From assembly GCA_024679065.1 (NCBI GenBank), contig JAGIQG010000004.1, positions 62,558,001 through 62,622,000 of the forward strand: a DNA stretch of 64,000 nt, read 5' to 3'. Position numbers and translations under genes: made by a program. How positions within the stretch are numbered: the stretch's first letter is position 1; each line of letters opens with the position of its first letter. The notes under the pieces were generated by a model. The model saw only the letters and a list, made by a program, of their open reading frames with translations, had not been told where the DNA came from and did no database searches. Shown in pieces: positions 3,410 through 55,493 of this stretch. This DNA comes from Sphyrna mokarran (Eukaryota).

Positions 3410-3700
3410 GCTACTTTCGGAGCTGTTCTCTGAGTTGTTCGGATGCCCGAATATGATGAAAGGCACACATGTTATCATGAATTGCTCTTTCCAACATTCT
3501 AGTTTCAATGCTATCATTTGTGTTTCCTGGTGAGAAGGTGGCTAAAAGTTGATGTTGAATCCGGCTGCAGAGAAAAGCAAAATGCACCTGACTTATGATC
3601 AAAGGTTTTCTGCTCAATTTGAGTCTCCAGGTCTCTGGAGTCTATTATGGAAGCGTTAAAAATGAATTAATCTCCAATGGTATTGAACTGAGCTTCTGGT
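3410..3700 (+). pseudogene. Degenerate Ig V-set exon related to the V exon at 25248-25544
   Basis: MMKGTHVIMNCSFQHSSFNAIICVSW*EGG*... then frameshift to FLLNLSLQVSGVYYGSVKNELISNGIEL. B-strand Cys and C-strand Trp present; DSGVYYC decayed to VSGVYYG; xNGxEL G strand. Confidence 0.7.
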
Positions 3701-4671
3701 TATTGGAGAGTGATATTGGGGGAGAAGCGCACCAGCGTAAAATACTGCAGGTGAACATCAGAGAATATGTAACTGACCAAATTGGCAGAATTACCACTCA
3801 GACCTGATTTGCGTTGTTATTTTCTAATATTTGCAGTATACGCTGTGTGTTCACAGCAGCATTTACTTGTCTGTGAAAATTAGACATTCATTATGGAGCA
3901 TGAAGTTCCAACAATACCGAAGGAGTCCGTGCTCGTGATTTTCGAAATATGTCATTCCCATTAGTCAGTTTTAAGAATTAATTCCTCCCCCCCGCCCCCC
4001 ACCGACTATGGTACGGTCAGCAAGACGTAACAGGCAACAAGATAAAGGCATGTAAAATCTCCGGCTCCCTGATGAGCACAATGCATTCTATATCTCTCTT
4101 GAGCATTCATACAAACGGCATTTTTAAAATTCCTATTCTGCATTTCTCTTTGGTTGCCGGACTACCTTCTTTAATGGCTGTGATCGATATTTTGAAGATG
4201 CTTCCTCATCGTCTGAAATTCCACCTGTTTGATCCCCGCAGCAAGGAACAAACGGTGATATGTCATCACGTCAGAATGATGTCTCATTTGATGACAAGTT
4301 GGAGGTGATGCTCATGTTATGTGGCTGATGTCCTTAACATATTATGTAACGCAGCCCATGAATTTGTCAGGTGGTGCAGCAGCCTCCTTGGCGACTGATC
4401 TTATATGTTTTTCAGACAGCACGTACTGCAAACACGGTGCACAGATCGTGAGGGTGATCGTTGTTTCATTAAATAGATTGTTTTACGGCAGGTGCAGTTT
4501 TCGGAAATCTGGCGGTATTTCACAGCTATTCTCATCTGGACAAATAAACAATATCCCAGCAAAATTCAGTCTTGAAAGGTGCGGGGATACGTTGTCGAAG
4601 CAATAGTTCCATCATTCAATGGAGAATATCTAGCCTCGAAACTGCTGCAGTAACCTTGGCAATAAAACCTT

Positions 4672-5422
4672 GGATGAATGAGTACACTATCAAAGGTAGG
4701 AGTCTTAGCTGTGTGGAAGAGCAGAGGGATCTTGGGGTCCGGGTCCATAAGACTCTCAAATCGGCCTCCCAGGTGGAGGATGTGGTTAAGAAAGCTTACG
4801 GTGTACTGGCCTTCATTCATCGAGGGATTGAGTTCAGGAGTCAGGAGGTAATGCTGCAGCTTTATAGCACCCTTGTCAGACCACTCTTGGAGTACTGTGC
4901 GCAGTTCTGGTCGCCTCACTATAGGAAGGACGCGGAAGCTATTGAAAGGATGCAGAGGAGATTTACAAGGATGTTGCCTGGATTGGGAGGCATGCCTTAT
5001 GAAGACAGGTTGAGGGAGCTGGGACTGTTCTCCCTGGAGAGACGAAGGTTGAGAGGCGACCTGATAGAGGTTTACAAGATGTTGAGAGGAATAGATAGGG
5101 TGGACTCTCAGAGACTATTTCCCAGGGCTGAAATGGTCGCGACGAGAGGGCACAGATTTAAGGTGCAGGGAAGCAAGTACAGAGGGGATACTAGGGGAAA
5201 GTTTTTCACTCAGAGGGTGGTGAGTGAATGGAATCGGCTGCCGTCGGTGGTGGTCGAGGCGAACTCGCTGGGGTCTTTTAAAAGACTTCTGGATGAGGAT
5301 ATGGGATCCAATGGGATTGGGGGTTATAGATAGGTCTATGGCTGGGTAGGTTTTGATGTGTTCGGTACAACTTGTGGGCCGAAAGGCCTGTTTGTGCTGT
5401 AGTGTTCTATGTTCTATGTTCT
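4672..5422 (+). mobile_element. Young 5'-truncated CR1 LINE (ORF2 C-terminus and 3'UTR)
   Basis: ORF 4572-5333 with LYSTLVRPLLEYCAQFWSPH; tail gttctatgttctatgttcta. Confidence 0.92.
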
Positions 5423-6076
5423 AAAACGCTGGTTAGACCTCATTTGGAATACTGCGTCCAGTTCTGGTTGCCTTACTACCGGGAGGACGTGGAGACTCTG
5501 GAGAGAGTGCACTAGAGGTTTACCAGGATGCTGCCTGGTATCGAAGGTCTGAGTTACGAGGAGAGACTAGGCAAATTGGGACTGTTTTCCTTAGAAAGAC
5601 GTAGACTTAGAGGAGATTTGATAGAGGTGTACAAGACTTTGAAGGGGATAGATGATGGCACCCAGGTTGATAAAGTTGTTAAGAAGGCGTACAGTGTGTT
5701 AGCTTTTATTGGTAGAGGGATTGAACTTAGGAGCCGTGAGGTTATGTTACAACTGTACAAAACTCTGGTGCGGCTGCACTTGGAGTATTGCGTACAGTTC
5801 TGGTCGCCACATTATAAGAAAGATTTGGAAGCATTGGAAAGGGTGCAGAGGAGGTTTACCAGGATGTTGCCTGGTATGGTGGGAAGGCCTTATGAAGAAA
5901 GGCTGAGGGGCCTGAGGTTATTTTCATTAGAGAGAAGAAGGTTACGCGGTGACCTAATTGAGGCGCAAAAGATGATCAAAGCACTGGATAGGGTGGATAA
6001 TGAGAGCCTTTTTCCTTGGATGGTGATGACCAACACGAGGGGACATAACTTTAAATTAAGAGGTGGTAGTTATAGG
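5423..6076 (+). mobile_element. Two fused CR1 fragments of different subfamilies
   Basis: ORF 5528-6112 contains the LFSLERRRLRGDLIE region twice; junction near 5652. Confidence 0.85.
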
Positions 6077-6198
6077 AACGTTGATTATTTGGAACTGAAA
6101 GTGATAAGGTAGAATTTAGAGTTCTTTCTTTCATGCTTTATTATTAAAACTGGTAGTAATCAAACTACTAATTTTATCAAAGTTATACTTAAACTGTG
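6077..6198 (+). repeat. 122-bp direct repeat, copy 2
   Basis: Matches 688-809 and directly abuts a truncated CR1. Confidence 0.9.
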
Positions 6199-6763
6199 AT
6201 TTATTTATTTATCAATTTATTTTTTTATTTATCAATCGGGATCCCCAGGGATCTGTTCTAGGACCCTTGCTGTTTGTGGAAACAATATGAAATCTAAATT
6301 GCATTTTCTGCGTAGTTAATGTAATGAAAAATGAGCACATCTACTGACAATATATTTATTGATATATATAGAAGTTAGCTTATCATGAATCATCAATTTA
6401 TTTCAGTTGCCTATTGCATTTGTAGGAATGAATTTAATTTCAAGTACTAACACTTAGTTATTAGTTATTGTATTACAGCTAAGATGCAACATGCAATGAA
6501 TACTTTCCTAACACTAACAGGATGTTAGAATTGGTTTTAATATATAGATATTGGGTTTCGTTTACAGAGATCGAGATTAGTTTCATTTTTAGATCCATTT
6601 ATGAATACTGCAAATTTTAGATATTAACAACCAGATGGGGAATATTTCCAAAAAATAGATCTCAGACTGAGACTGTGGTACCCTGATGCAGAATGTCTCC
6701 TGTGTCAATTCCGTTTGAGACTCCAGCAGCATCGCATTGACGAAACCAAACATTTTCCTACAG

Positions 6764-7071
6764 ACAAGTTTCAAATAGGAGATGGCCGAACAGAGGAGAA
6801 TTCGTTGAATAAATTTCATGAATAAACATTACTGCCACAACAATTTGTCAGCATCTTCAGATCACCTGCTGATGACATTCTCACGGGAGAGTCAATGGTT
6901 GCGTTTATTGGATACAAAAATTGGCGTCTGAATGCAGGGGAAGCAGGGTTCATGCTAGATCAGATACGGCACCACCATCACGTATTTGGGAGAATTCTTG
7001 TTTCAATCTATGGTGTCGTCGATCGGATGGAGATTGGAATGGTGTCGAAAACATTTAATCAAATATTCAAA
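6764..7071 (+). pseudogene. Probable degenerate Ig V-set exon
   Basis: 308 nt between acceptor ttttcctacag and donor gtaagt. Reads LQITC**HSHGRVNGCVYWIQK and later SIYGVVDRMEIG / NGVE across frameshifts. Confidence 0.45.
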
Positions 7072-7944
7072 GTAAGTGAAGTTGAAAGAAGTAGATTGTG
7101 GAAACCTGTACCACAAAGCATCTGCAGCCTGCAGAAAGGATGAATTTTGGATGACCGAAGTTGGCAACAGTTAAGTCGTAGTAATTACTCCTCTGGACAA
7201 GTTTCATTGAAGCGTTTAAAATTCTGTCCTATGCCGTAGCCTGGGAGCGGAACTTTCTAATGTAGGAACTGGAAAGGAGACGGGATTACTTTAAAATGGG
7301 AATTGTTGTCTTGGCGAGAATAGCGGAACTAATATTCTTCATATCTAAGAAGCTTTCAATGTGGAGTACAGAGAGAGATTGACCTTTTTACCTTGCCAGA
7401 TAGTAGCTCAGCCTGGTGATATAAGAGTAGAAGTATTGCACTTGTGCCATTTAAAAATCATTAGACACACTACAGTTCGAAATGCGCCTACACTTCAGGG
7501 GCCGTAGTAATGAAAGTGAAGAGTTGCACCATCTACTTAGTGACATTTGGCCTGTAACTTGGACATCAAAGCTAATTAAAAAGTTAACTAATAGGAATGT
7601 TTGAATTTTTCTGGCAGGTGGGAACAGCGCAACAATGAAACATCACGTACACTCACAAAGGGGCTGTTTGCGGATGATATTTGATGGGAGCCATGCATAG
7701 ACTAGCGTAGGGATCTGGACTGAATCAGATTCACATTGTGGCGGAATATTAAAGAATGCGGGGAAGGCAAATAATGGTCGAGCTCCTGGACTGCGGCTGG
7801 AAATGTATTAATCTTCTCCATGGAAGAGAGAAAAAAAAAATGGACGAAGAGCAATGTGCCCGTCAGATTAAGTGACAGTATTCTCGAAAGTTACTCACAT
7901 GTAAGATACAAAACAAAAACGATACTAGGTTAGCAAGATTTTTA

Positions 7945-8620
7945 CCAACAAAGAACAAATAACAAAGAAAATTACAGTCCTCCAAACTTACACTGGCCAT
8001 GCTGCCCGACTTAACTAAACCAGCTACTCTTCCAGCGACTATATCCCTTTATTTCCATCCTATTCATGTATTTGTTCAGCCGCAATTTAAAACTCACTAT
8101 CATATTTCTTCCACTACCTTGCCTGGCAGCGAGTTCCAGGCACCTGTCACCCCCCATGAAAAAAAATTGCATCGTACATTTGCTTTAAACCTTGCGCCTT
8201 ACACCTTAAACCTATACCTCCCCACGCCCCAGTAGTTGCGTCTTGCATCCTAGGATATAGCTTCTGACTGTGCCCCTGCCCTCCCTAATTTTGTTGATCT
8301 GTATCATGTTGCCCTTCAACCTCCGTTGTCCCAGTGCGTACAAATTAAGCTTCTCCAACCTCTCTCCTCGTAGCTGATGCCCTCCATATCAGGCAACATT
8401 CTGATTCATCTTTTCTGTATCCTCTCCAAAGCTTCCACATCCTTCTGATAGTACGGGGAAAAGAATTGAACACAACATATCAAGTGCAACCGAACAAAGT
8501 TTTATGAAGCTACAATATAACTTACCAATTCTTAAGCTCAATGCCCCGGTCGATGGAGGCAAACATGTCGTATGCCTTTTTGACTACCCTTTCCTCCTGC
8601 GTTGCCAGTTTCAGTGACCA
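7945..8620 (-). mobile_element. Old CR1 LINE 3' fragment
   Basis: Reverse-strand CR1 C-terminal motifs; aacaaagaac-type tail. Confidence 0.7.
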
Positions 8621-8789
8621 GGAGATAAAGTCTCGGGAATTGAATGGATTCTTGAGGAATCACGGACAGGGATATGTATAGAAGTACAATGTTGGGATAA
8701 CAGATTCTTTGCCGCTTCCTTGGCTTGTCTGATCTTGTATTCTGTATATCTAACCTGTATCGATTATAGATAGATAACCGTGCTGAAAC

Positions 8790-9100
8790 GCTTCCATGGA
8801 GAACTAAGCTATCGCACTACTTGGTTAACTTAATTTTATTTCGGTGCACAGAGAGTGAGTCTCCCCTAACCACGTTGACTGAAGATAGAAAAACAAATTA
8901 TTATGGTGATAAGATATCCATGCTTCAGCTGCTATATGTTCTCGTTTCTAAGAAGTCATTGATTCCTCTGTCTTCATCCAGAATGTGATGCACGAATAAC
9001 GATTTTGATTAATGCCGTTTAATACATTCCCAGTGCCTCCAGCACCTGTGACGATAACGTTCCTCGCACTGCTCTGGACAACATCTTCTTTCTTTCCCAA
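8790..9100 (-). pseudogene. Possible highly degenerate V-set exon
   Basis: DVVQSSARNVIVTGAGGTGNVLN...ITFWMK and FLSSVNVVRGDS in another frame; canonical cysteines not retained. Confidence 0.3.
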
Positions 9101-9534
9101 ACAGCTTAACTTGACATCAAAATGGCACCGAAATTAGAATTGGAATAAACCCTACAGAAAGACGGAACGAGGAGAGACTTTAGCAGGTTTCCAGCTCCCT
9201 CAAGCCTATAGATATCTAGTTGGTTTATACATCCCATATTTCTTATATTTCTCTCGTGACCCCAGCCAACCACAGTTACACATTTCACGATCAAGGAAAA
9301 ATCGCTAAATTATTCATCTGAATTACACCTTGTCGGACTTAAAGACCTACTGGGGCTTTGCTAGTGGTCCAAGATCTTCAGCAGGACCTCATTGAATGTA
9401 TTAGATGAAGGACGTTAATGCGCTATACCAGAATGAGATTGCCAAGTGTAAATATGTAATGATCTCGTTCAGAGTGGTTGAAAATTCGAAGATAGAACAT
9501 GTCTGAAGCAGATAAATGGTTTTAATCTCGTAGT

Positions 9535-10630: not shown

Positions 10631-11930
10631 TTGACAGAACAAACAATAGCATAGCACAAAAACAAACGTTCAACCCGCCGACACAGTTTCCTCCCTAATC
10701 CCATATTGTCTTACCTTATTTCCTGCTATTCATGTATCTATCCAGATGCCTCTTGAACGTTGTATAGAATCTCCTTCCACCAACTCCTCTGACAGCATGT
10801 TCTGGACATTCGTCACCCTCTTTGTGAAAAAATCGTCCCTTACATATTTTTTAAACGATCTCCCTCTCACAGTCAACCTATGCCCCCGGGTAATTGACTC
10901 TTCTATCCTGGGAAGAAAACTTTGAATATCCATTCTATCCAAGTCTGTCACATTCTTGAAAGTCTCTATCAGACCGCCCCCCCACCCCCCCCCCATCCTC
11001 CGAAGTCCAATGAAAACAATTCATACGCCTTGTTAAGTACCTAATCCACTTGAGTTGACACTTTGAGGGAACTGGGGATCTGCACGGAATCACATTAAAT
11101 ACGATTTGTCTGGGTTATATTCCATGTGCCATAATTTGGCCCAGTTGTCTAGGTAATTTATATTTTGCTATATTCTCTGACAATCCTCCAAACTACTGGT
11201 TATTCCATTTTTGCATCATCTGCAAACAGACCACCTACATTTATCTCCAAATCATTTATGTGTATTATATCAAAAGAGGCCTCAGCACTGATTCTTGTGG
11301 AACACAGCTGGTCACAGACTTCCAGTTAGAAAAAAAAAATACTCTTCTACTCCTACTCTTTGCTTTCTATTCCCAAGCTAGTTTTATTTCTATCTTACCA
11401 ACTCACCTGAGATCCCATATGACTTCATCTCTGTATTAGCCTGCCATGAGGAACCATATTGAAGGCTTTACTGAAATCAATGTCTACAACATCAACTGCC
11501 CTGTCCTGTCATTCTTTGTCACTTCCTCAAATAATTCAATCAAGTTTGTGAGACATGACCTCCCCTTCACAAAACCATGATTCCAATCTCTAATAAGCCC
11601 ATTCTGTTCGAGATGTGAGTACATCCTGTCCTGAAGAGCCTTCTCCAAAAAATTCCTCATTGCTGACGTAAGGCTCACAGGCCTGTAGATTCCCTGACTG
11701 TCTCTTTTGCAATTTTTAAACAAAAGAACACTGTTAGCTACACTCAAATCCTTTGGTATCTCGCCTGTGGCTAAAGAAGGTACAAAAATTTTGGACCAAG
11801 CCCTCAGTAATTCTCCCCCTGCCTCCCTCAAAATTGTAGGAAAGCCACCATCTGGTCTTGGAAAGATATCCACCTTAATGTTTGTCAAAACCTCCAATAC
11901 CCCTTTCGTTTGTATCTCTATTGATAGGGC
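10630..11930 (-). mobile_element. Old CR1 LINE fragment
   Basis: ORF 11484-12023 YRPVSLTS...HGFVKGRSCLTNLIELFEEVT; 3' end ORF 10730-10996. Confidence 0.85.
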
Positions 11931-13189
11931 ATTCAACCATGTTCGATCCTTTGACCCACGTTTACCGTCACCTTTCCAATTCCCTTGACTCCGAGAGCCC
12001 TGATTGGGTCCCCTTGTCCTCACAGTATCAACCCAGCAGCATTTAATATTTCAATTATTCATGTTACAGCCCTCAACATTAATTTAGGGAACTTCAGAGT
12101 GTGATCTTTCTCCTGTATCATGAATTCCTCTTTCATATCCCTGTCATGTTTTGTCTCAATGCAAATGTTTCCTTCCACTCCGCCACCCACTCTTCAACAC
12201 TAAGCTATTAGTCTCTTCTTCTTAGCTTTTCGACATTTCTGTTGTAATCTATTCCAGATGTATTATAATAATGCATATTCACCAACTCAAGGAAAATGCA
12301 ACCACAAAACACATCTTTGCCTTATCCGCCAACTTCGATTCCTACCATGCCCCCTATCTCTGACAGCATTTTGCAGTATGCACTTTTTTTGTGAAACCTG
12401 TTCCATTCCTCCATCGCGTCCAAATCTTTATTCATTTCCTTTGGCATCTCACAGAGGGTTCAACACATCCCCTTTTTATTTTCTCCTTCCTCCCCATTCA
12501 AGCCCCAGTCATTTTTTTTTAAGTTAAGTGTTCAATTTTGTGTGTTTCCTTCGCTGCTCCCTTCACATTGGGTGACTAAATACCTTCCCCTTCACATTGG
12601 GTGACTAAATTCAGACAGCGTGACTGCTTTGTGAAACATCTTCACTCAGCGCATAAGCAGAAACCCAGCAGAACCTCATCTTTCCATTAGTCATTTGACC
12701 GTCCTCACATTAAACAACTTCCGATTGTAATCGTTTTCCTCTATCGTGAGTCTCCCTTTTATATCCCTGTCATGTTTTGTCTCAATGCAAACTTCCCCTT
12801 CCAAACCCTGCCCATTCTTCAACATTGAGCCATCAAAATCTCGTTCTTAGCTTTGCTACATTTCTGTTGCAATCTGTTCCAGATGCATAATATCACACAC
12901 ACATATTCCTTCTCTTTGGAATCAGAATCAAACGAACTCTAAACATTAATTCAGTTGGTTCTTCCTATAGAGGCTGGCAGACGAGCTTAACTTTTCTGTC
13001 ATTCGCTGTTTTGTTTTGGATTTCAGCATCCGCAACATTTGCTTTATCTTTGAACCTACCCGTAAGGGGGTCTGAACTGTAGAGAGAGTTGTCTTGCAGA
13101 GAGGCAACGCAAAAGGCTGACATTCATAGTCATGGAAAGGAAGTTTACTGATGAAATTCCAGAATTAACATCATCATCTTGCTTCTCCA

Positions 13190-18689: not shown

Positions 18690-19420
18690 TTAACAACAGA
18701 AAGCTGTGATATCAGATTTTCATCCATTAAAATAGAGACAGAGTATCCAGGAGGGAGTTGGAGCTGACCTGTGGTTGTAGAAGAAGTGTGTGAACAATGG
18801 AAATATAAGATGCTGAGATAGGCAGATAAGTGATTCAGTGAGCCAAAGGCAATGAGACTTGACATTTAGTTTGGCTGGCAGTCAATTTGAAAGCTGGACA
18901 TTTCTAGATGATTACTTGTACGAGCATAAAATTGGAACAATATCTGGATGCAGGAAAGGTAAGAGGAAATCATTATTTCTGACGAACTAGCAGACTGCTG
19001 ATTCGCCATTTCGGAATATCCAAAATGAATGAACAGCTTTGAAGGAAATTGTTGGGCTCAGTCGCCAAATGATGTGGCAACCTACCCCAGAGATGCTCAA
19101 ACGTTTCGTAACGGTATCACAAGCTGAACATGAGAAGGATCAAGGATGGAAGACCAATAAAAAGCCTATGAGAGCGGAAGGCGACTATTTATTGAACATA
19201 TTGCAATTTGAAGAATGAAAGATACATGGATATTTTCAGATCACATATCAAAGGAGGAGGTGGGAGAGGCGGGCATTGGTGACAATTTTAGCAGAAATAG
19301 ATATTTAAACTATTCCTGGAATGATAATTGAATGAAATCACAATTCAGGTGAGGAAATACTTTGGAATATTAGCAAATTAATGTGCCAATCAAGAGATTC
19401 ATCTCTGGATATTGGATGCA
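18690..19420 (+). mobile_element. Very old CR1 fragment (endonuclease/linker region)
   Basis: Decayed gagtgaccataa-, ccatgg- and gatagtaaaagc-like tracts typical of CR1 ORF2 5' half. Confidence 0.45.
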
Positions 19421-19735
19421 GATTAGACAACCTATGAAAATTCAAACTAAATAAGAGTAGAAAATGACGCAGAGAATTACTTTCCTTTCATGTTATCCAT
19501 ATATGTGGAATGGCGAGAACTCGAAAATACGACGACTGACGAGCATGGTCAAAGGCGATGGAAAGCCATACGTGGACTGAGTTTGAAGGCAAACGGATAA
19601 TGCACAATTAATATTTGTAGAAAAAAATCCATCTGCGCTTTTCGAAAATGTCAAAAGTAGACTGAGGAAAAGATATACCCATGATGACTCCATCGATAAT
19701 GCATTCATCGCGCAACACTTCCTTGTTTGCTTAAC

Positions 19736-19864
19736 TTAGCTGCTCGTTTTCACCGCTGCATATGTTAACCTTGTTTTTTGGAATGTTGTTTTTGACGATG
19801 ACACAGAACCTGGCAGATTCAGAGCAATGTGAGTCAATTTGCTCTCAGCGGTGCTCTGTATGGT
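19736..19864 (-). CDS. Terminal cytoplasmic exon with ITIM
   Basis: Acceptor gttattgatttacag, phase 0: TIQSTAESKLTHIALNLPGSVSSSKTTFQKTRLTYAAVKTSS*; LTYAAV fits the ITIM consensus (I/V/L/S)xYxx(L/V). Confidence 0.8.
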   Translation of the reverse strand, partial: TIQSTAESKLTHIALNLPGSVSSSKTTFQKTRLTYAAVKTSS

Positions 19865-20006
19865 CTGTAAATCAATAACAGGGGAGTATTTTACTATTTA
19901 TTAAATTAAATTATATCGAAATTGCATCAAGTTGATTTTCAATATAATTTCAAAAGCAAATTATAGCCGACAAGATTAAAGTTTCTATGTGCGAATTGAG
20001 ATTTAC

Positions 20007-20054
20007 CTTTGATTATGCCGTCTGTTCTCTGTGTTGTTTCGGCATTTTGCCTCG
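20007..20054 (-). CDS. Candidate optional 48-nt cytoplasmic exon
   Basis: Acceptor tctttatcttaccgattccaag, donor aag/gtaaat; phase 1 reads ARQNAETTQRTDGIIK, phase 0 contains TAA. Confidence 0.4.
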
Positions 20055-20479
20055 CTTGGAATCGGTAAGATAAAGAACACCGTACATTAGTTTGCTTTCG
20101 GCTGAATTTAGTTCCTTCTAGGAATTCGATGCTAACTATGCAGTAAGTTTCATCTTTCGGGCACAAAATTTGCATACATACATACATACAAATTAGAAGC
20201 AGAAGCAGGCTGCTCAGTGCTAAAACCATTTTGCTATTCCTTAAGACATGTCTAATCCCCGCGTGGTCTCAATTTCACTGTCCTTTTTACGCCCTGAGTG
20301 TTCAAGTCTTGGAAATTGTCCCAATTCAGTAAGCTCCACAAGCATTTACAAATTTCCGTATCCCTCTAACCTCTTACAATTCCTTGGCATTTCCCAGCCA
20401 TTATTCACAGTAGGTATTTACTTTGAAAAATAGCAAATCAGCATTAGTGTTTTTCCCCACCCAGGTTTCTCTCTTGTCA

Positions 20480-21520
20480 ATCAAAAAAGTATCGAAGTTA
20501 ACCTTGAAGTAATTGAATGAATATGCCTTCACCACTCTCTGATTAAATCAGTTCTACAGATCCGTGGCGGGCTGAGAGAAACAAATCAAATCTCCTCGCC
20601 GTTGTCTTAAATGGTAAATGGTGTTATTTTGTTTTCCAAACGACATCGCGTAGTTTTAACCTTTGCTACAAAGTATCACATTCTTGCAACGTCCATGCTA
20701 TCAAGACGACTCAGAATTGTCTACTTTTCAAAAAGATCGCTTAGCTTTCTAAAGTGAAGACTGTACCAGTCCGATCTGTTAAAATGTCCTCAATAAAATA
20801 ACATGTTCATCCCAGCAATCAATCTGGTGAAACTTCTCTTAATTATTTGAATTGAAATTATTTTACTTCTTAATGAAGGACCAAAACTGCGTACAATACC
20901 CTTGGGATGGAATTTTACCGGCACGCCCCCGATTCCGGGGGCGGTCGCGAATGGGCGGACGGCTTCCTCCGATGGTTTCGAGCAGGATAGTACGGATCTT
21001 TGCAGGAGGTGCTTGTCAATTTCCTCCCTCGGCACCAATGTTCATCTGCAGCGCTGTATTTTATATTCAAATCCCGTTGTAATGAACGGTAACATTCCAT
21101 TGGGCATCCCAGCCACTTATGCGCCTTTTCAATCATATATTTCGTTTCATATTATTGTGTTCTATTTCATATATCAGGACATGTATGTCTCTGTATATCA
21201 GAATCTAAAATATTTCCGCATAAGAAAAGATATATGTTTTTGATTCTGACTGTTACAATGGACAAATTCACGATTTCTCAAGTTATATTCCGTGTGTCAT
21301 TTTTGCACACTCTTTACCAATTCATGATTCTGCAGACTCCATATTTTCTCCTTGCCACTGACTCACCCTTCTACTTTCTTTCATCAACATCTTTAGCAAC
21401 CATGCATATAGTGTCACCATCCGAGTCGTTGATATCATTTGTACATAATTAAGGAAACATGACACTACAATTGATACATTTTTTCAACCAGGTAACAGAT
21501 AAAAGGCTAAAATGTACCCA
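20480..21520 (-). mobile_element. Old CR1 fragment in intron
   Basis: Reverse strand: RSFTRLIAGM...; decayed RT motifs. Confidence 0.6.
20904..21101. mobile_element. About 200-bp MITE (Harbinger-type termini) inserted in the old CR1
   Basis: TIRs atggaattttaccg (20907-20920) and cggtaacattccat (21087-21100), 13/14 match; GC-rich interior. Confidence 0.65.
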
Positions 21521-22164
21521 TTTTATGTTTCCTGATTGCTAGATAGCCCTTGATAGATCAGAGACCATTACCGTACAGAAATAGGTCCTTCGGCCGTCCA
21601 AGCTGAAATGCTAATTTGTGAAAGAGAAAGACAGGTTGCCTAAACAGTGTAAGTAGTTGTTTTTTTTTCTGAATCGCCTTGGTGAATAAAAAAGTTTTAT
21701 TTTTAAGCAAAGAATAACGGGCGATCTCATTTTAAACCGCGTAAAAAGGACAGGTCTCTATTCTCGTTACCGATTCTATGCTGAGATTAGAAATTTGAAT
21801 TTTATTGTAATATAAATGCCGTGGCACATCTTCACCATATTGCAGCTGGGCTTGCACAACTATGAATGCAAATCTGGGAATCTTATTCTAACTATCTTTA
21901 TTAGCCGAAAAAGTATTGCCGTTTTAGCTAATATAGATGGAAAGTTAAAACTATATTAAACTACTCAAACAATTGGCAGAATTTGCAACCGCTTCGACCA
22001 TTTTTCTAATTTTACTTGTTTAGACATAAAGCTGTGCTTTTACAGAAAAGGGAAAAAGACAAGTCTAAATCCCCACATGCTTAAAAGAGATTTATTTAAT
22101 GTGATGTATCAATCATTCATCTGAACTTGAGAACACAAGCTCAGGATTGATAAAATGTTCTTAC

Positions 22165-22208
22165 CTCATCTGTACGCTGTGTGGTATTTATTGATTTTTT
22201 CTTTGCAT
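22165..22208 (-). CDS. First cytoplasmic exon (44 nt, phase 1 to 0)
   Basis: Acceptor aatttcaccag, donor gag/gtaaga; DAKKKSINTTQRTDE, a basic juxtamembrane stretch. Confidence 0.8.
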
Positions 22209-22654
22209 CTGGTGAAATTCAGAAAGGATAACGTAAGAATACAGGGCATATTTGCATTTGATCCTATGTCAGTTAAGTCAAATGCAATTCATGCCAGCAA
22301 GTTGTAGCGATACGTTGATTTCGGAATATACCTCAAAATATTTAAACGAAACGATTTTGTTTCGTTATCGTTTCTGTATTAAAGCTACGCAGACACCGTT
22401 GCACTATTTAATCTACGTTTTATGGTTAAATCTTTGTAATGCAGTTCGGAAAATGAAGCTGTGAGCATTATTATGTCAGGTGTTCATGTAATACTTGAGT
22501 TGAAGCAACATGTAAGTGTGAAGATATTTTCAGTCAGTTTAGGCGAATTATACCAATAAGCAGTTTTGCTCCCGCTTATAGTTGCTCGAATGAGATATTT
22601 TAAGATTTTGCCTGCGAGTAAATTATTTTTCGGTGTGAAACTTCTCACTCATAC

Positions 22655-22762
22655 CTTTGCATTCCATGACTCCTATCAGTATCATTAGGGACAAAAATAG
22701 AATTGCCAGCGCACCGCGGTACCATCCACCGACCATAAGAACGTTGATTTTAAAGGGATTAG
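22655..22762 (-). CDS. Transmembrane exon (108 nt, phase 1-1)
   Basis: Acceptor ttttttgattttgacag, donor aag/gtatga; ANPFKINVLMVGGWYRGALAILFLSLMILIGVMECK. Confidence 0.85.
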
Positions 22763-22874
22763 CTGTCAAAATCAAAAAATGTCTTGTAACTCACATGCAC
22801 ACATCTATCAATATCAAATGCAAAATGTTAAATAGCGCTATGAACAGAATATCATGATACAGTATAAAACTTTT

Positions 22875-23367
22875 ATAAGAAAGATGTGGAGGCTTTGGAG
22901 AGGGTACAGAGGAGGTTTACCAGGATGTTGCCTGGTATGGAGGGCAGGTCTTATGAAGAGAGGCTGAGGGATTTGAGGTTGCTTTCGTTAGAAAGGAGGC
23001 GCATAAGAGGGGACCTAATAGAAACATATAAGATGATTAGAGGTTTAGATAGGGTGGACAGTGATAGCCTTTTTCCTAGGATGGAGAAAGCTAGCACGAG
23101 GGACACAGCTTTAAATTAAGGGGTGATAGTTATAGGACGGATATCAGAGGTAGGTTCTTTACCCAAAGGGTGGTTCGGGAGTGAAATGCCCTGCCTGCAG
23201 CGGTTGTAGATGCGCCAAGTTTGGTGGCGTTTAAGAGGTTAGTTGATAAGTATATGGAAGAGAAGGGAATGGTTTAGTATGGAGGGACATTGCTTTTTAT
23301 ATTGGTCGGCGCAACATCGAAGGCCGAAGGGCCTGTTCTGTGCTGTAATGTTCTATGTTCTATGTTC
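22875..23367 (+). mobile_element. Young CR1 3' fragment in the C1-TM intron (antisense to the gene)
   Basis: EALERVQRRFTRMLPGMEGRSYEERL; gttctatgttctatgttc tail. Confidence 0.9.
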
Positions 23368-23439
23368 AGTAATCAATTTAATTATCGATATTAATGCAGC
23401 TGTTTTACGAATCGTTCGAAGAAAACGTAATTGAAACAT

Positions 23440-23750
23440 ATAGATCACAGAATCCGACAGTCGTAGAATCCCTGCAGTGCAGACGGAAGCCATGGAGCCT
23501 ACATCGACAAAAGTCCCACGCAGGTTCTAACCGCGGACCTCCAGGTATTCACGCTTCTAAGACCCCTGACAACAAGGCACAATGTGGCATGGTTCACCTA
23601 ACACACATCTTTGGAGCATGGGAGACAACAGGAGCACCATGAGGAAACCCGCTCTTTCGCAGGCAGAATGTACAAACTCAACATAGTCATCCGAAGCCCG
23701 AATTGAACCCGGGTCCCTCGTACTTAAAGACAGCAGCACTAACCCCTGAG
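23440..23750 (-). mobile_element. HE1-like tRNA-derived V-SINE, degenerate
   Basis: Reverse strand ggttagtgctgctg...gggacccgggttcaattc (B box), then gagtttgtacattct...gggtttcctc V-domain. Confidence 0.8.
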
Positions 23751-24424
23751 CAAGCCTAATGGAGAAATATCAGCAATGCTGAATAAGATGTTCATTGAAT
23801 GCACATTCACATTCATGACTATACAAAACGCAATCGTTTTCAACTTATTGTGCCAACCAAAAAGCAATTAAAATGCCCTTCCAAATTTCATTGCATCACA
23901 CACAGAATATGTCCAAAAAATCGCTTGAGCTCATCTTTCAAGTAAACATTTGTTACCGTCTGTTTACTCATCTTATCACAAATACCTGTGATCCTATATT
24001 TTATAGCATCACTGGTGACCAACAACTTTATAAATGAGGAATCAAGTTGTTCGAGTTTGTATGTGCAGCTATATAAAAAGACTCAATTGTTCGATTCCAT
24101 TGTTCAGGGATCCATTAGGTTTTAGTGCTTCGATTGAACATTAATGCTGCATTATTTTCTGAGTTACAATATTATGCGGTTAATCTGATTTATGGGAGCA
24201 AGACTGAAAACTCCAACTCATTAGTGATAAGATTGCATGATGCAGTCTACAACATATCCTATTTTAAAACCAAAAGATTGGAAATCTTCACCCAAAGAAT
24301 GCAATAAGATTCATCAACATATGAGCATCAAGTTCCTCTAGTAATAATTTCCTATGCATTATCGTTTTTCATGCATTTTTGTGAAGGGCGAAAGACTAAA
24401 CTATTATCGTTTATATAAGATTAC

Positions 24425-24726
24425 CTTTATCAAAAATGGTATAGCTGGCATTTGCAGGTATGGAGCTGGAAACGTGATATACTTGACAGATATAAACTGT
24501 GCCTTGTTCGATCGCTTGCGGTTTCAGGGTACTGACAACTTCAAAAAGTCCCTCGGAATTTGCTTGTTGTTCATTTTGAAATCCGCTGACAATTTGAACA
24601 CCGTTTTTATACCAGGTGAGGTTAAATCCTTTAGGGTAAAAGGCCGCAGTTTTGCACTGGAGTCTAATAGTAGCAGATGAGATGTCTTCGGATGATAAGG
24701 AATAATTTTCAGGGGAATCGGTGGAG
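24425..24726 (-). CDS. Ig C1-set exon with a 1-nt deletion near 24700
   Basis: (A)PPIPLKII[fs]SLSSEDISSATIRLQCKTAAFYPKGFNLTWYKNG...NSEGLFEVVSTL...GTVYICQVYHVS...IFDK; motifs CxxxxFYP, W and YxCxVxH. Confidence 0.92.
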
Positions 24727-25247
24727 CTAAATTCAAGATAACAATACAAATAATTTGAAAAAGTGAGCTTCTGCCTGAAAAAATCTTATTTTTATTAATT
24801 ACACACAGCTACTTCCAGGCAAGCAAGTTGATTTAATAATCAGTATTTTTATATTGCTGCGTGGTGTTTTTCATAGGTTTTCATAAGCCTCGAAAAGTTT
24901 GGATTGTAAGCCCCGCTCTCTTATAATGAGCGAAAGGGCATTGAGAATGTAAATAATCTAGCGACTTTTAGATTATTCATCCAGTTACAACGTTTCCATA
25001 TTGAAAACGAGATTTAATTATTTTCTTGTACTTTGCTTGGCAAACTTCAATTCAAGTAGCATTTTTTAAAAGATAGGGAGTTGATAAACTCTGCAATGTC
25101 GCTGCTACTGCAAGTTTTCCTCTTTGTTGAACATCTGACCTTCCAATCAAGTGAAAGTGCTTTCTGCGTTTTGTATTTATTTATTTTAATTATCTATTAA
25201 CCGTCTTTGATTGACCCATCTACTAAACATGACATATTTCAACTCAC

Positions 25248-25544
25248 CATATATGAAAACTTGCACAGCAATATCGTTCACAATCGCCCGACTCTGAATT
25301 TTGACTGCACAGTGATATGTTCCAGCATCCGGTATGTCGACATTCAGGAGATGAAGGTACGCTCCACCTTTCATCATCTGGAAGCGTTTTCCACTGTCCT
25401 CCTGCAAAAAGCTGTTATAACCATCTTTCCACCAGAACGCCGTTGCGTTTATAATGTCGTTATGGAAAGGGAAAGGACATCGCAACATTACGTTTGTGAA
25501 TCTGAGCACCTTTATTGGTTCAATATCCGATGTACCCATAGCAA
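25248..25544 (-). CDS. Ig V-set exon including G strand (pre-joined VJ type), 297 nt, phase 1-1
   Basis: VAMGTSDIEPIKVLRFTNVMLRCPFPF...AFWWKDG...YLHLLNVDIPDAGTYHCAVKIQSRAIVNDIAVQVFIY; acceptor ttttcttttgatag, donor g/gtgagt. Confidence 0.93.
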
Positions 25545-25732
25545 CTATCAAAAGAAAAATGAACACACATACTAAGCCATGCATTTGCAATAAAAGTTGA
25601 TATGTACTACGAAAATAACATTACCCATTCAGCTCATGCATATTGTAACGATTTAATGTACCTCACTGAGAGTTACTCTCGAGTTCCAGCATTTGTATTT
25701 TGATTTGAGATTTATAAATAAGTTTTACTCAC

Positions 25733-25807
25733 CCAGAACCTTCCGACACGTGGCATGGCAATAAATACAAATTTAAAATCAAATAAAAACGTACACTTTT
25801 CCGCCAT
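25733..25807 (-). CDS. Candidate leader exon (out of phase with V)
   Basis: ATG at 25807, strong donor tgg/gtgagt; 75 nt MAEKCTFLFDFKFVFIAMPRVGRFW; an alternative frame is hydrophobic (FYLILNLYLLPCHVSEGS). Confidence 0.55.
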
Positions 25808-26779
25808 CTATTAGATCAACTTAGTTTTGCGTCTTGCTTGCGAAAGTCATACAAAACAAAATGAAAGCAGAATATAGAAATCTACCTGGAAGGAAAATCA
25901 CCAAAAAACATTTGCCCCAAAGCGACCAACCCATGAGCACATGGATGCAGAGACAATACGCTGAGATTTTATATCGAACAAACGGATATGCGTCGAATGG
26001 GCGGCTCTCATTTGATTACAAACGCCGACTGACCCATGGTATCAAAAAACAAATGACAAGATAGTGCTGAATGAAACAAATGCATGTCTTTTCGAACAAG
26101 ATATTCCAGCATGTTAATGAGCTGAAATAGTAATTGGAAACAGAAATCAATTACATCAAAATAGACTTGTGAGTGTGGGGAGTGGTGAATGGGACTGATC
26201 TGGGCGGTATCGATGAAGCTACGGTATTTGACAAATCAAGTCCATGAATCGCCATTTTGTGAGGGAATAATATTTCATAGCTTCATAATATAGGTCCCCC
26301 AAATATTTGTGTTGGATTTACTGTGGGCCTATGTTTATCATTTAAAGTTCCATAGGTCCGAACCTTCTGGTTGATTCAGGCAGCAGATAGATGAGAAGTG
26401 CGTAGAGCCTGTCGGATAAATATTACTTTCATTGATTGATGCATAATCAGATTGAAGGGGGTGAGATAATTTCCCAGTAATGGAACATCTGTGGAAATTT
26501 CCGAAATTGACTTCTAGTGGTTTTTGCTATTTCTTTCTGCGCGGAGTGTAGGTTTACTGAATTATGTGAACTGTTGGAGCTCGGGCCCAGCCTGTTTTAC
26601 GCCTCACTAGTTACCTTTTAAGCTATCTTCATTTCCAACTGTAATCCTGTAGTGTTGGTTTAAGACACGTTTTTCCAAGTACCCTACGAATAAGAATAAA
26701 CCCGCGACAATATACAAACTGCTGAGTTAAAACCGAGATGTACACATCGCAGATCAATCAATTTAATACATTTTATCGA

Positions 26780-44215: not shown

Positions 44216-44828
44216 GCCGCTGGTAAATTTGGGGAGCTGCAGCCGTGCTGTCTGCAAGGGCTCTGTGCACATCCTTTAGCCTGAAATGTTCTGTGGTGCT
44301 GGGTCCAACAACAATGCAAGACCCCAGGTGTTTGCTGAGACCAGGGTCGGTGTTGCAGAAAGAACATTGGAGATTGTGCACAACAACAGCTCTCCCCCTC
44401 CCCCCAAATACTCGCAGAGCTTCCACGGACCTGGGACAGCGAAATGGTCACAAAATAGGAAACCAGTGAGCAGCTGGGAGCCTGTGGAAGTCATGCACTT
44501 TCCTCCTCGTCCACCCTAGCTGTTGAAGCGCCTGATTCAGACTTTTATTCAGCAGTCGATTACGGAACGGTTCCCGATTGGTAAAGACGGTGGTAAAGTG
44601 GGGAATGGTGGTAAAGTTGGGTGGAAGTTCATTGATTCAATTGAAATACATGCAAATGCATTTAAATCGCCATTGTACCCGTTTTAGGCGCGAAGTAGAT
44701 CGCCACTATTCCCGGTTTTCAGTAAAATGGCAATTTGCGCGGACTTGGGTACAGATAATGATAATGGCCTTTCACCCAAATTTACCATATTTTCGTGCCA
44801 GAAAACCGGCGCGCGGAAATGACAAAAT

Positions 44829-46030
44829 AGTTCATGATGAATAATTTCCATCCATCACTACCCTCCGTCTTCTATTAGCTAGCCAATTCCTGATCCAATT
44901 TGCTAAATCACCCTCAATCCCATACATCTGCATTTTCTGCAGAAGCCTTCCATGGGACACCTTATCGAACGCCTTACTAAAGTCCATATATACCACGTCA
45001 ACTGCCTTACCCCCATCCACCTCTTTGGTCACTTTTTCAAAAAACTCAATAAGGTTAATAAGGCACGACCTACCCTTCACAAAACCATGCTGACTATCCC
45101 CAATCAATTCATTTCTCTCTAAATAACTATAAATCCTATTCCTAATAATTCTTTCCAATACTTTGCCCACAACAGAAGTAAGACTCATCGGCCTATAATT
45201 CCCAGGAAAGTCTCTATTCCCCTTCTTGAACAATGGGACCTTCCATTGGGACGGTCCAATGGACCCTTTTCCTTCCTAAATGTTGATACGCCCAGATATT
45301 CAGTTCCCAGTCCCAGTCACTCTGCAACAACTTTTCCGTAATAGCCACTAGCTCATACCCATTTGTTTCGAATGCTTCGTGCATTCAGGTAAAGTGTCTT
45401 TATACCAGCCTTTATTTGGACCTTATTTGTAGAAAAACTACTAACCTCTCCCGTGTCTATACTCTTTTAATTAGTGGAACATCCTCAACATTAACTTGCA
45501 CTCGTACCCTCTTCTTCAGGTTTTATTATTTCCCCTAGGCCTACACCTCCCATTCCTCCACTAATTAGTTTAAAGCCCTATCTACAATCCTAGTTATACG
45601 ATTGGCCAGGACGCTGGTCCCAGCACGATTCAGACGAAGACTGTCCCATCTCAACAGGTCCCATCTGCCCCAATACTGGTGCCAAAGCCCCCAAAATTCG
45701 AACCCATTCTTTCCACACCAATCCTTGAGCCACGCATTCATCTCCTTAATCCTATTTACCCTGCGCCAATTTGCGCCTGGTTCAGATAGTAATCCAAAGA
45801 TAAGCACCTTGTCGGTTCTGCTTTTTAATTTCGTTCCCAGCTTTTCATACTCCCTCTGCAGCTCCTTAGTTCTTATTTTGCCTACGTCATCGGCACTACT
45901 TGAACAACGGCAACTCGAGTCTTACACTCCCACTCCTGGTTCCTTTGCAGCCCAGATGAGGTATCCTGGACCCGAGAACCAGGCAAGTAATACAACCTTC
46001 GGGATTTTTTATCCTTGTCACAAAGGACAG
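44829..46030 (-). mobile_element. Internally deleted CR1: ORF1 esterase end plus ORF2 pieces
   Basis: MNAWLKDWCGKNGF...WDSLRLNRAG (SGNH/GDSL ORF1); FKKGNRDFPGNYRPMSLTS...DFSKAFDKV. Confidence 0.88.
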
Positions 46031-48905: not shown

Positions 48906-49378
48906 TTATACTGCACGAAGTGAAAGTGCTGAGTTGTTGCCAATGGTCTCTGATTGTTAGCGGCGTTGCCTGGGATAAGAAAAAAAAGCTTCAGCAGTTT
49001 ACTGCAATTAAGAAAGTAACTGGTGCATTTTGCAATGTGTATCCATTCTTACCAACTCACCTAGGATCTCATATGACTTCATCTTCTGTATTAACCTGCC
49101 GTTAGGAACCTTATCGAAGGCTTTACTGAAATCCATATATGCAACATCAATTGCCCTGTCCTGTCATTCATTGCCACTTCCTCAAATAATTCAATCAAGT
49201 TTATGAGACATGATATACCCTTCATAAAACCAAGATTCCAAACTCTAATAAGCCCATTCAGTGCCAGATGTGAGCACATCTTATCCTGAAGAGCTTTCTC
49301 CAAAAATTTCCTCACTACTGACATATGGCTCACAGACCAGTAGATTCCCTGACTGTCTCTTTTGCAATTTTTAAACAT

Positions 49379-50790: not shown

Positions 50791-50867
50791 TTCCATATTA
50801 GGGATAATATATATATTATTATATAGGAATAATATAATAGGATAATGGATTTGCTACTATATAGTTA

Positions 50868-51916: not shown

Positions 51917-52224
51917 TGACGGTGGCGCAGGCTCGTTGGGCCGAAGGGCCTGTTTCCCATGCTGTGTTGCTCTTTAAAAAAAATTGTTTGCTACACTCAA
52001 AACTTCTGGTATCTCACCCGTGGCTAAAGAAGGTACAAAAATTTTGGACCAAGCCCACAGTAATTCTCCCGCTGCCTTCCTCAGTATTCTGGAATTGGCA
52101 ACATCTGGCCCTTGGGAATTGTCCACCTTAATGTTTTTCAAAGCCTCCAATAATCCATTCTTTTGTTTCTCTATTGATAGGGCATTCAACCATGTTCAAC
52201 CCTTTGCCCCACTTTACCCTTACC

Positions 52225-55492: not shown

Positions 55493-55493
55493 A

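What the first reader, a model, noticed from the sequence alone, without database searches (positions are those of the whole stretch)
19736..25807. Non-rearranging antigen-receptor-like V(J)-C1 receptor with both a TM arginine and an ITIM
Seen: the spliced model V(99 aa)-C1-TM(VLMVGGWYRGALAILFLSLMILIGVM)-DAKKK...-LTYAAV has canonical splice sites and consistent phases from V onward. The V exon includes its own G strand, and no RSS follows it. Established: C1-set domains occur mainly in Ig, TCR, MHC/B2M, tapasin, SIRP and B7-family proteins; a V-C1-TM layout mirrors a TCR chain; TM Arg recruits FcRgamma/CD3zeta (NKp30, NKp46); ITIMs recruit SHP-1/2. Inference: a member of a poorly characterised elasmobranch innate receptor family resembling the proposed pre-RAG VJ-C1 ancestor, possibly dual-signalling. 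Whether the family is already described cannot be determined from the sequence alone.
Basis: partly seen in the sequence, partly recalled or inferred. Interest (0 to 1): 0.88.

Follow-up and report, generated by a model that had tools for sequence, protein, structure and literature searches.

The report
Broken shark SIRP-like receptor gene copy
This is one copy of a large shark family of SIRP-like immune receptor genes; as assembled it has a frame-breaking one-base gap and an early stop, so it is more likely a dying copy than a new kind of dual-signal receptor.

Summary
Three parts of the spliced model fail. (1) The leader exon at 25807 is unsupported. The start is the ATG at 25584, in the same ORF as the V domain. 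(2) V to C1 is not in phase. The C1 exon is 302 nt, its first 9 codons match the family only in one frame and the rest only in another, so one base is missing near 24699-24703. (3) A tail exon was missed (20117-20007). It holds an ITIM-like LMYGVL and an in-frame TAA where relatives have a conserved Tyr, so LTYAAV lies behind a stop.

The gene belongs to a family found across sharks, rays and chimaeras, which RefSeq auto-names SIRP-alpha-like, SIRP-beta-1-like or tapasin-related-like. Members with ITIM tails usually lack the TM Arg, and members with the Arg usually have short tails.

Most likely this is an Arg-type copy keeping relics of an ITIM tail, recently inactivated; an assembly error at the frameshift is not excluded. 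The scan has noted similar receptors elsewhere in this genome. The interest is low to moderate.

The parts
25248..25584 (-). Exon 1, coding part. It holds the start ATG (25584-25582), the signal peptide MHGLVCVFIFLLIVAMG and a short V-like/I-set-length Ig domain. It ends at the donor ATG|gtgagt in phase 1. The ORF is intact.
   Evidence: Searches give the ORF and splice context. In one search, Heterodontus P0016 residues 3-123 align to 25584-25246 at 48.8% identity, E 1.3e-32, signal peptide included. In one search a relative's RNA contig stops aligning exactly at 25248. In one search I-set scores 20.1 bits and V-set 17.8 bits, both below cut-off.
24425..24726 (-). Exon 2, the C1-set Ig domain. 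It is 302 nt, which is not a multiple of 3. The acceptor is ttag| and the donor AAG|gtaatc, phase 1.
   Evidence: C1-set E 1.1e-11, 45.3 bits; 65.6% identity to Stegostoma P0159 over 93 aa; it sits inside a 15-row clade with SH-aLRT 98.
24699..24703 (-). Frameshift site, with one base too few. Upstream of it only the phase-1 frame (APPIPLKII) matches the family. Downstream only the next frame (SLSSEDISSATIRLQC...) does. Read in phase from the V donor, the frame runs into a stop within this exon, near 24527.
   Evidence: over the 9 family columns the phase-1 frame matches 110 of 198 cells, against 25 and 40 of 198 for the other two frames; every homologue alignment in the domain's frame starts at or after 24701. 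One search shows the relatives' junction sequences.
22655..22762 (-). Exon 3, connecting peptide plus TM segment, phase 1 to 1. The Arg codon is at 22718-22716.
   Evidence: One search gives the splice context gacag| and AAG|gtatga; tails of P0013 (E 0.001), P0036 (4.5e-4) and P0016 (0.002) align here; the Arg shares a column with the Arg of Heterodontus P0013.
22165..22208 (-). Exon 4, the juxtamembrane piece DAKKKSINTTQRTDE, phase 1 to 0.
   Evidence: One search gives weak alignments to P0016 (GGKRTSLNTSQHAD) and P0163 (AQKKTINPAQH).
20007..20117 (-). Phase 0 to 0. It holds the ITIM-like LMYGVL at 20090-20073 and an in-frame TAA at 20015-20013, where relatives have a Tyr.
   Evidence: P0016 residues 279-309 align at E 0.008; the P0158 tail aligns at 45.5%, E 4.3e-4. 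One search gives the splice context and translation; a relative's RNA contig joins this exon to exon 6 at the same borders and reads TAT at the place of the TAA.
19736..19864 (-). Exon 6, coding part, phase 0. LTHIAL (19837-19820) is the family's LTYxAL with His in place of Tyr. LTYAAV is at 19768-19751 and the stop at 19738-19736.
   Evidence: P0016 residues 318-357 align at 52.5%, E 1.5e-6; a relative's 659-letter contig covers 19730-19866 and runs 512 letters further 3'.
25733..25807 (-).
   Evidence: for the phases; no homologue aligns here.
3459..9369 (+). A decayed paralogue on the other strand. A V-like piece lies at 3459-3620 and a C1-like piece, with what may be a TM remnant, at 9015-9369. 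Both are interrupted by stops and frame changes.
   Evidence: the window's own C1 exon finds 9081-9294 at E 2.4e-8. P0046 aligns to 9094-9297 at 52.9%, E 1.1e-13, with stops, and P0077 to 3459-3620 at E 2.9e-4.

Best explanation
The locus is one copy of a multigene family of non-rearranging Ig-superfamily receptors found across sharks, rays and chimaeras. The layout is signal peptide, short V-like domain, one C1-set domain, TM segment and cytoplasmic tail.

How the family most likely works is inferred from motifs and not shown. Members with uncharged TM segments carry tails with repeated LTYAxL and xxYAExK tyrosine motifs. These would recruit SHP-type phosphatases and inhibit the cell. Members with an Arg in the outer part of the TM segment mostly have short tails and would signal through an adaptor chain with an acidic TM residue, of the FcR-gamma, CD3-zeta or DAP12 kind.

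The window's copy is of the Arg type but still has the tail exons of an inhibitory ancestor. The conserved Tyr codon in exon 5 is a TAA, and the next motif has His for Tyr. LTYAAV is therefore an untranslated relic, and only LMYGVL would be translated.

As assembled, the C1 exon also lacks one base. The reading frame from the V exon then hits a stop inside exon 2. That makes this copy most likely a recently inactivated pseudogene, lying next to an older, heavily decayed paralogue.
For: Family membership:
- One search found 594 proteins at E<=0.001. The single-C1 hits of 200-450 aa are all chondrichthyan models.
- The C1 exon falls in a 68-row clade (SH-aLRT 98), and within it in a 15-row clade (98) that holds sharks and rays.

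Frameshift: 110 of 198 family cells match the phase-1 frame over the first 9 codons of exon 2, against 25 of 198 for the frame of the rest of the domain.

Stop at the conserved Tyr:
- Family tails align to exon 5.
- A relative's spliced RNA contig joins exon 5 to exon 6 with 10 substituted letters that read TAT GCA GAG | GCG.

Paired pattern:
- All 5 Arg-free proteins with long tails have at least one ITIM-like motif.
- Of the 8 Arg-bearing proteins, 6 have none, 1 has a motif unlike the family's, and 1 (Stegostoma P0163) keeps one LTYAAL.
- Arg-type and ITIM-type proteins pair up within a species: P0013 and P0016 are 87% identical, and P0163 groups with P0159.

No transcript of this copy: in each covered exon there are places where every laid contig differs from the window. 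Examples are 25460 (3 of 3 contigs), 24516 (3 of 3) and 19828 (2 of 2).

A decayed neighbour lies at 3459-9369.
Against: - Apart from the two lesions the copy looks healthy. The start codon and V ORF are intact, and all nine exon borders are canonical.
- Every invariant or nearly invariant family column that I checked by eye against one search is kept or conservatively changed. A long-dead gene would show more damage.
- A one-base deficit in a short base run could be an assembly error or one allele. No DNA reads of the source individual were available.
- No contig covers 24697-24726.
- The two runs are small (about 30 million letters each), come from one study, and their organism is coded. The absence of this copy's RNA is therefore weak evidence.
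- The TAA lies 7-9 nt before the last exon joint. By itself it would only shorten the tail.
Confidence: 0.6

Rival explanations
1. The gene is functional, and the one-base deficit is an assembly error or a null allele. It would encode an Arg-TM receptor with a shortened tail that keeps one ITIM-like motif (LMYGVL). It would then be an adaptor-coupled receptor with a residual inhibitory motif, comparable to KIR2DL4 (recalled) or to the Stegostoma model P0163.
For: The V ORF, the start codon and all splice sites are intact. Conserved structural residues are kept (compared by eye). Stegostoma P0163 is an annotated model with a TM Arg and one LTYAAL. The TAA is too close to the last exon joint to expect transcript decay (rule recalled).
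Against: The frameshift is in the sequence as given. No transcript of this copy was seen although 2-3 relatives were. No protein of this locus is in the protein collections searched. The C1 end branch of 0.26 is longer than that of most of its clade.
Confidence: 0.27
2. A functional dual-signalling receptor is made with the in-phase acceptor at 24685, skipping the first 14 codons of C1, and by joining exon 4 directly to exon 6, so that the TM Arg and LTYAAV are in one protein.
For: Both joints are phase-compatible with canonical AG and GT.
Against: The acceptor at 24685 would remove the A strand, which all 22 aligned relatives keep. Relatives' proteins contain exon 5, and a relative's RNA joins exon 5 to exon 6. 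There is no transcript evidence for either joint.
Confidence: 0.08
3. It is a member of the UrIg/UrIg2 lineage or a rearranging antigen-receptor relic.
For: A profile of the family hits UrIg2 (9dmx) and Fab chains about as well as SIRP-alpha.
Against: There is a single C1 domain followed by a TM exon. UrIg has a VJ domain plus three C1 domains, and nurse shark UrIg2 has a VJ plus nine (PMC12227049, Introduction and passages read). There is no RSS. In the C1 tree the multi-domain proteins lie outside the 68-row family clade.
Confidence: 0.02

Closest known systems
Chondrichthyan RefSeq models auto-named 'tyrosine-protein phosphatase non-receptor type substrate 1-like', 'signal-regulatory protein beta-1-like', 'tapasin-related protein-like' or 'uncharacterized'. 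Examples are Heterodontus francisci XP_067905931.1 (P0016) and XP_067905013.1 (P0013), and Stegostoma tigrinum P0159 and P0163.
   Same: The domain order is the same. So are the V motif CPFPF...WW...FLQEDS...GGAYLHLLNV..DAGTY.C, the junction P.PLKI, the C1 motifs, the TM type and the tail exons. Identity is 49-56% in V and 58-66% in C1. The window's C1 sits in the same clade.
   Different: This copy has the frameshift, the TAA at the conserved Tyr and His for Tyr in the next motif. It has no GxG before the G strand. No protein at or above 70% identity was found, so its species or its nearest paralogues are not in the collections searched.
Mammalian SIRP family (SIRP-alpha, -beta, -gamma)
   Same: Both have an N-terminal Ig domain followed by C1-set domains. 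Both have inhibitory members with four tail tyrosines and activating members with a basic TM residue and a short tail. The family profile hits SIRP-alpha 2wng at E 1.6e-26 and SIRP-gamma 4i2x at 9.3e-23. The nearest Atlas clusters to P0016 are SIRP clusters at 0.96. A rodent SIRP-alpha is found at E 1.5e-11.
   Different: There is one C1 domain, not two. The V domain is shorter. Identity is only about 30% over 35% of the length. Fab chains and UrIg2 score as well as SIRP does. Orthology, synteny and CD47 binding were not tested.
KIR2DL4 and similar receptors that have both a TM Arg and an ITIM (recalled, from no call)
   Same: They combine a basic TM residue with an ITIM-bearing tail in one chain.
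   Different: They belong to an unrelated Ig family with no C1-set domain. Here the combination looks transitional and the gene is broken.
UrIg and UrIg2, non-rearranging shark VJ-C1 genes (PMC12227049; PMC10751288)
   Same: They are non-rearranging, have the V and its G strand in one exon followed by C1-type domains, and occur in cartilaginous fish.
   Different: UrIg has three C1 domains and is secreted. UrIg2 has nine C1 domains. Neither paper reports an ITIM tail: a term search of both texts found 0 occurrences of 'ITIM'.
PRARP genes of chicken (Fu et al. 2019, J Immunol). I saw only the reference entry in PMC10751288. The paper is not held, and its content is recalled.
   Same: [quoted passage not shown]

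Membership tests
Chondrichthyan SIRP-like V-C1 receptor family (RefSeq models) | The C1 domain groups with the family's C1 domains and away from multi-domain Ig-like proteins. | tested here: met
   a 68-row clade with SH-aLRT 98 and a 15-row subclade with 98. This is the quick tree with 94 columns; the careful search did not finish.
Chondrichthyan SIRP-like V-C1 receptor family (RefSeq models) | Same exon order and homologous V, junction, TM and tail segments. | tested here: met
   All six coding exons have family alignments, but those to exon 4 are weak (E 0.7-1.4).
C1-set Ig domain (Pfam PF07654) | Score above the curated cut-off. | tested here: met
   45.3 bits against 21, E 1.1e-11.
V-set Ig domain with J-like G strand (VJ type) | V-set profile match above the cut-off and a GxGTxLxV motif. 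| tested here: not met
   V-set 17.8 bits against 26, and I-set 20.1 against 23.7. This copy reads NDIAVQVFIY, while the family consensus has GxGTGxxLxVY.
Mammalian SIRP family | V domain followed by two C1-set domains. | tested here: not met
   One C1 exon lies between the V and TM exons.
Mammalian SIRP family | Specific sequence kinship to SIRP above other V-C1 proteins. | tested here: inconclusive
   Fab, UrIg2 and SIRP-alpha all fall between E 1e-29 and 1e-26. favour SIRP names. The rodent SIRP-alpha fell below my filter for the tree.
Mammalian SIRP family | Orthologous chromosomal position and CD47 binding. | not testable with these tools
Rearranging antigen receptors (Ig/TCR) | An RSS after the V segment and a separate J segment. 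| tested here: not met
   The G strand and a splice donor are in the V exon.
UrIg/UrIg2 | A VJ domain followed by three or more C1-type domains. | tested here: not met
   A single C1 exon. The definition is from PMC12227049.
Activating member of a paired receptor family | A basic residue inside the TM segment. | tested here: met
   Arg at 22718-22716, in the same alignment column as the Arg of P0013. Its depth in the membrane is inferred from homology only.
Activating member of a paired receptor family | A short tail without ITIM. | tested here: inconclusive
   The tail is cut by the TAA but would keep LMYGVL.
ITIM-bearing inhibitory receptor | A translated [S/I/V/L]xYxx[I/V/L] motif (consensus recalled). 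| tested here: inconclusive
   LMYGVL lies before the stop and LTYAAV behind it. Neither is translated if the frameshift is real.

The most novel reading that the evidence does not exclude
The one-base deficit is an assembly error or one allele, and the locus encodes a working receptor that couples a conserved TM arginine to a residual ITIM. It would be a snapshot of an inhibitory receptor turning into an activating one. It would sit inside an ancient SIRP-like V(J)-C1 paired-receptor family, shared by sharks, rays and chimaeras, for which I found no dedicated paper. That family could be the cartilaginous-fish counterpart of SIRP and a further non-rearranging V-C1 lineage beside UrIg.
Probability: 0.2. 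Interest if true: 0.55.

Novelty: new member of a known kind. Interest (0 to 1): 0.3.

Why it matters
For this locus alone it matters little. It is one, probably defective, copy among many.

The family is worth a comparative immunologist's attention for four reasons:
- It is old, being shared by sharks, rays and a chimaera.
- It has the V-like-plus-C1 layout that is discussed for antigen-receptor origins.
- It shows repeated, species-specific pairs of ITIM-type and Arg-type members.
- It is hidden under inconsistent automatic names (SIRP-alpha-like, SIRP-beta-1-like, tapasin-related-like, MHC class II beta-like, NCR3LG1-like).

A copy caught between the two types shows how such switches happen, through a TM Arg, a stop at a tail tyrosine and motif decay.

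For annotation, the lesson is practical. The signal peptide is in the V exon, and the tail is built of short phase-0 exons that are easy to miss.

Tried and rejected
- Leader exon at 25807: rejected, because of its phase and the lack of any homology.
- A cryptic phase-2 donor four bases past the V donor (GA|gttgaa) would restore the frame through an out-of-frame stretch. I rejected it as unlikely next to the strong ATG|gtgagt, and because the phase-1 frame is the one that matches the family.
- An alternative 'YRS...DH' type TM exon, as in P0020, P0162 and P0164: none was found between 15000 and 27000.
- Other Ig exons in the window by ORF pattern: one search had a coordinate bug and is void. 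In one search, 6 ORFs fitted a loose Cys-Trp-Cys pattern, and 2 of the 6 are this gene's.
- Other genes for synteny: 10 ORFs gave 0 Pfam families.
- NCBIfam: no meaningful match for 5 queries.
- Word-index protein searches with the V exon and the C1 exon found nothing. That tool sees only proteins of 0.55 to 1.75 times the query length, so these blanks say little.
- Literature: five searches found no paper describing this shark family. The 'PRARP' search returned unrelated uses of the acronym. The library lacks most subscription journals. Fu et al. 2019 and Flajnik et al. 2023 (UrIg) are not held. Supplements were closed, and the gene lists of shark genome papers may name the family.
- Papers seen: for PMC12227049 the outline, passages and Introduction; for PMC10751288 and PMC13262535 passages only; for all others listings only.
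- The tree used my own filter: BLASTP E<=1e-6, at least 66 query residues aligned, one stretch per protein. I dropped the isoform duplicates P0151-P0157. The rodent SIRP-alpha P0171 did not pass the filter. The careful search did not finish, so the tree is the quick one.
- The joined spliced model was never built or searched.

Full report
WHAT IS THERE.
The gene lies on the minus strand. Three-frame reading of 19000-26500 and the splice contexts give six coding exons:
- Exon 1, 25584-25248. It holds the ATG, the signal peptide MHGLVCVFIFLLIVAMG and a short Ig domain. The donor is ATG|gtgagt, phase 1.
- Exon 2, 24726-24425. This is the C1 domain, 302 nt long.
- Exon 3, 22762-22655. It holds the connecting peptide and the TM segment, with the Arg codon at 22718-22716. 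Phase 1 to 1.
- Exon 4, 22208-22165, DAKKKSINTTQRTDE. Phase 1 to 0.
- Exon 5, 20117-20007, KELNSAESKLMYGVLYLTDSKRGKMPKQHREQTA*SK. Phase 0 to 0.
- Exon 6, 19864-19736, TIQSTAESKLTHIALNLPGSVSSSKTTFQKTRLTYAAVKTSS*.

All nine exon borders are canonical AG or GT. Pfam places exon 2 in C1-set (E 1.1e-11, 45.3 bits, cut-off 21). It leaves exon 1 below the cut-offs of I-set (20.1 against 23.7) and V-set (17.8 against 26). Against solved structures, exon 1's best matches are I-set domains of titin, axonin and contactins, followed by PD-L1 and CD276. Exon 2's best matches are Ig constant domains.

No RSS follows exon 1. The full pattern has 0 matches. The heptamer has 4 matches against 8.09 expected, and none lies on the gene's strand within the gene.

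THE FAMILY.
A search of 1.84 billion representative proteins with exon 2 alone found 594 proteins at E<=0.001. The long multi-domain hits are about 30% identical. The single-domain hits of about 200-450 aa are 40-64% identical, and all ten that I looked up are RefSeq models from cartilaginous fish: Rhincodon, Heterodontus, Chiloscyllium, Heptranchias, Mustelus, Mobula and Callorhinchus. Their automatic names are 'tyrosine-protein phosphatase non-receptor type substrate 1-like', 'tapasin-related protein-like', 'class II histocompatibility antigen beta chain-like' or 'uncharacterized'.

A search with the full-length Heterodontus protein P0016 added Stegostoma, Hemiscyllium, Scyliorhinus, Pristis, Hemitrygon, Mobula and Cetorhinus. 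The names there include 'signal-regulatory protein beta-1-like' and 'natural cytotoxicity triggering receptor 3 ligand 1-like'. It also found one true rodent SIRP-alpha at E 1.5e-11, with 30% identity over 35% of the query.

These proteins align to every exon of the window gene. The best identities are 49-56% for V and 58-66% for C1.

In a C1 tree of 116 rows the family forms a 68-row clade (SH-aLRT 98). The window's C1 sits in a 15-row subclade (98) holding both sharks and rays. Its end branch is 0.26. This is the quick method on 94 columns, and the careful search did not finish.

A profile of 22 family members hits Fab chains and UrIg2 (9dmx) at about E 5e-29, SIRP-alpha (2wng) at 1.6e-26 and SIRP-gamma at 9.3e-23. 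The ESM Atlas puts P0016 nearest to two SIRP clusters at 0.96. So 'SIRP-like' is a fair working name, but orthology to SIRP is not shown.

(1) The leader. Relatives' N-termini align to the ORF directly upstream of the V domain: P0016 residues 3-123 align to 25584-25246. The proposed leader at 25807 has no homologue and the wrong phase.

(2) V to C1. The relatives read ...VY A.P.PLKI[VL]S..SE......L.C. In the window the first nine codons after the acceptor at 24726 give APPIPLKII in the phase set by the V donor. The rest of the domain, SLSSEDISSATIRLQC... onwards, is in the next frame. Counted on alignment A1, the phase-1 frame matches 110 of 198 cells over those nine columns. The other two frames match 25 and 40. 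Every homologue alignment in the domain's frame starts at 24701 or later. One base is therefore missing at 24699-24703. In phase from the V exon, the frame closes within exon 2.

(3) The tail. P0016 aligns to it at E 0.008 and P0158 at 45.5%, E 4.3e-4. It has an in-frame TAA at 20015-20013.

RNA EVIDENCE.
Only two small runs from one study shared words with the locus, each with a share of 0.05. Laid on 19730-25650, their contigs cover only exons and an intronic repeat, and they are 90-96% identical to the window. They are therefore transcripts of relatives and not of this copy. At 25460, 24516, 24529 and 19828, for example, every contig differs from the window.

The contigs are still informative:
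- One contig stops aligning exactly at the V donor (25248).
- One joins 19861 to 20014 with ten other letters between. That is exactly the length of the last 7 bases of exon 5 plus the first 3 of exon 6, so the relative uses the same exon 5-6 borders.
- On the gene's strand those ten letters read T GCA GAG GCG, which gives TAT (Tyr) where the window has TAA. The relative thus reads YAEA, as P0016 does.

No contig covers 24697-24726, so the frameshift could not be checked.

PAIRED PATTERN.
I examined 14 proteins of the subclade.
- Five (P0016, P0158, P0159, P0160, P0036) have no TM charge and have tails with 1-4 ITIM-like motifs.
- Three (P0020, P0162, P0164) have a distinct ...YR[ST]..G...DH/NH TM segment and short tails.
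- Five (P0013, P0163, P0165, P0166, P0167) have an Arg at or next to the window's position.
- One (P0006, a short model) has neither feature.

Of the eight Arg-bearing proteins, six have no ITIM-like motif. P0020 has a motif unlike the family's. Only Stegostoma P0163 keeps one LTYAAL.

Arg-type and ITIM-type members are each other's nearest relatives within a species. P0013 and P0016 are 87% identical, and P0163 groups with P0159. That is the usual picture of paired receptors. The window copy is Arg-type, and its tail exons are decaying: a TAA at a Tyr, LTHIAL for LTYxAL, and a locally scrambled exon 5 end.

VERDICT.
Membership of this chondrichthyan SIRP-like V-C1 family is firm, at about 0.95. 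I put 'recent pseudogene' at about 0.6 and 'functional, the frameshift being an error or an allele' at about 0.27. The points against decay are the intact V ORF, the splice sites and the conserved structural residues.

The mechanistic statements about SHP recruitment by ITIMs and adaptor pairing by the TM Arg rest on established knowledge of mammalian receptors. Nothing of that kind was tested here.

Earlier first-stage notes of this scan report many similar V-C1 receptors in this genome, so this kind of gene was found before on other DNA of the same genome. Those notes are unchecked.

Noticed in passing
window 3459-3620 (+) and 9015-9369 (+): Remains of a second family member on the other strand, running towards this gene. 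The V-like and C1-like pieces are riddled with stops and frame changes. The C1 piece is 52.9% identical to Heterodontus P0046 over 70 aa.
   Followed up: partly
window about 22880-23500 (intron 2 of the gene): An interspersed repeat with very high summed contig depth in the two runs (564 to 1610, against 7-17 on the exons). It has many loose ends, so it is an abundant, transcribed repeat family.
   Followed up: no
window 4500-6100, 11500-12050, 44800-46000 and 49000-58600: Many long ORFs with reverse-transcriptase-like and endonuclease-like translations on both strands, recognised by eye only. The gene sits in LINE-rich DNA. Ten other long ORFs between 13.5 and 44 kb gave no Pfam family.
   Followed up: partly
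window 20006-19948 (-), just after the exon 5 donor: The intron start reads GKSQFAHRNFNLVGYNLLLK in frame. It aligns weakly (45%, E 0.004) to a tail unit of Stegostoma P0160 (GKSQPNYAALNLKGPKVTLK), so it may be a further decayed tyrosine-motif unit.
   Followed up: no
window 25308-25314 (+): The only RSS-like heptamer in the gene lies on the opposite strand, over the Tyr-His-Cys codons of the F strand. It is no more than chance would give (4 matches in the window against 8 expected).
   Followed up: yes
family proteins P0020, P0162, P0164, P0042, P0070, P0093, P0109, P0116 (no window coordinates): A second, well-conserved TM type in the family has an Arg near the outer end, an Asp-His (or Asn-His, Glu-His) near the inner end and short tails. 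It is found in several shark species and would be worth its own look as an adaptor-binding module.
   Followed up: partly
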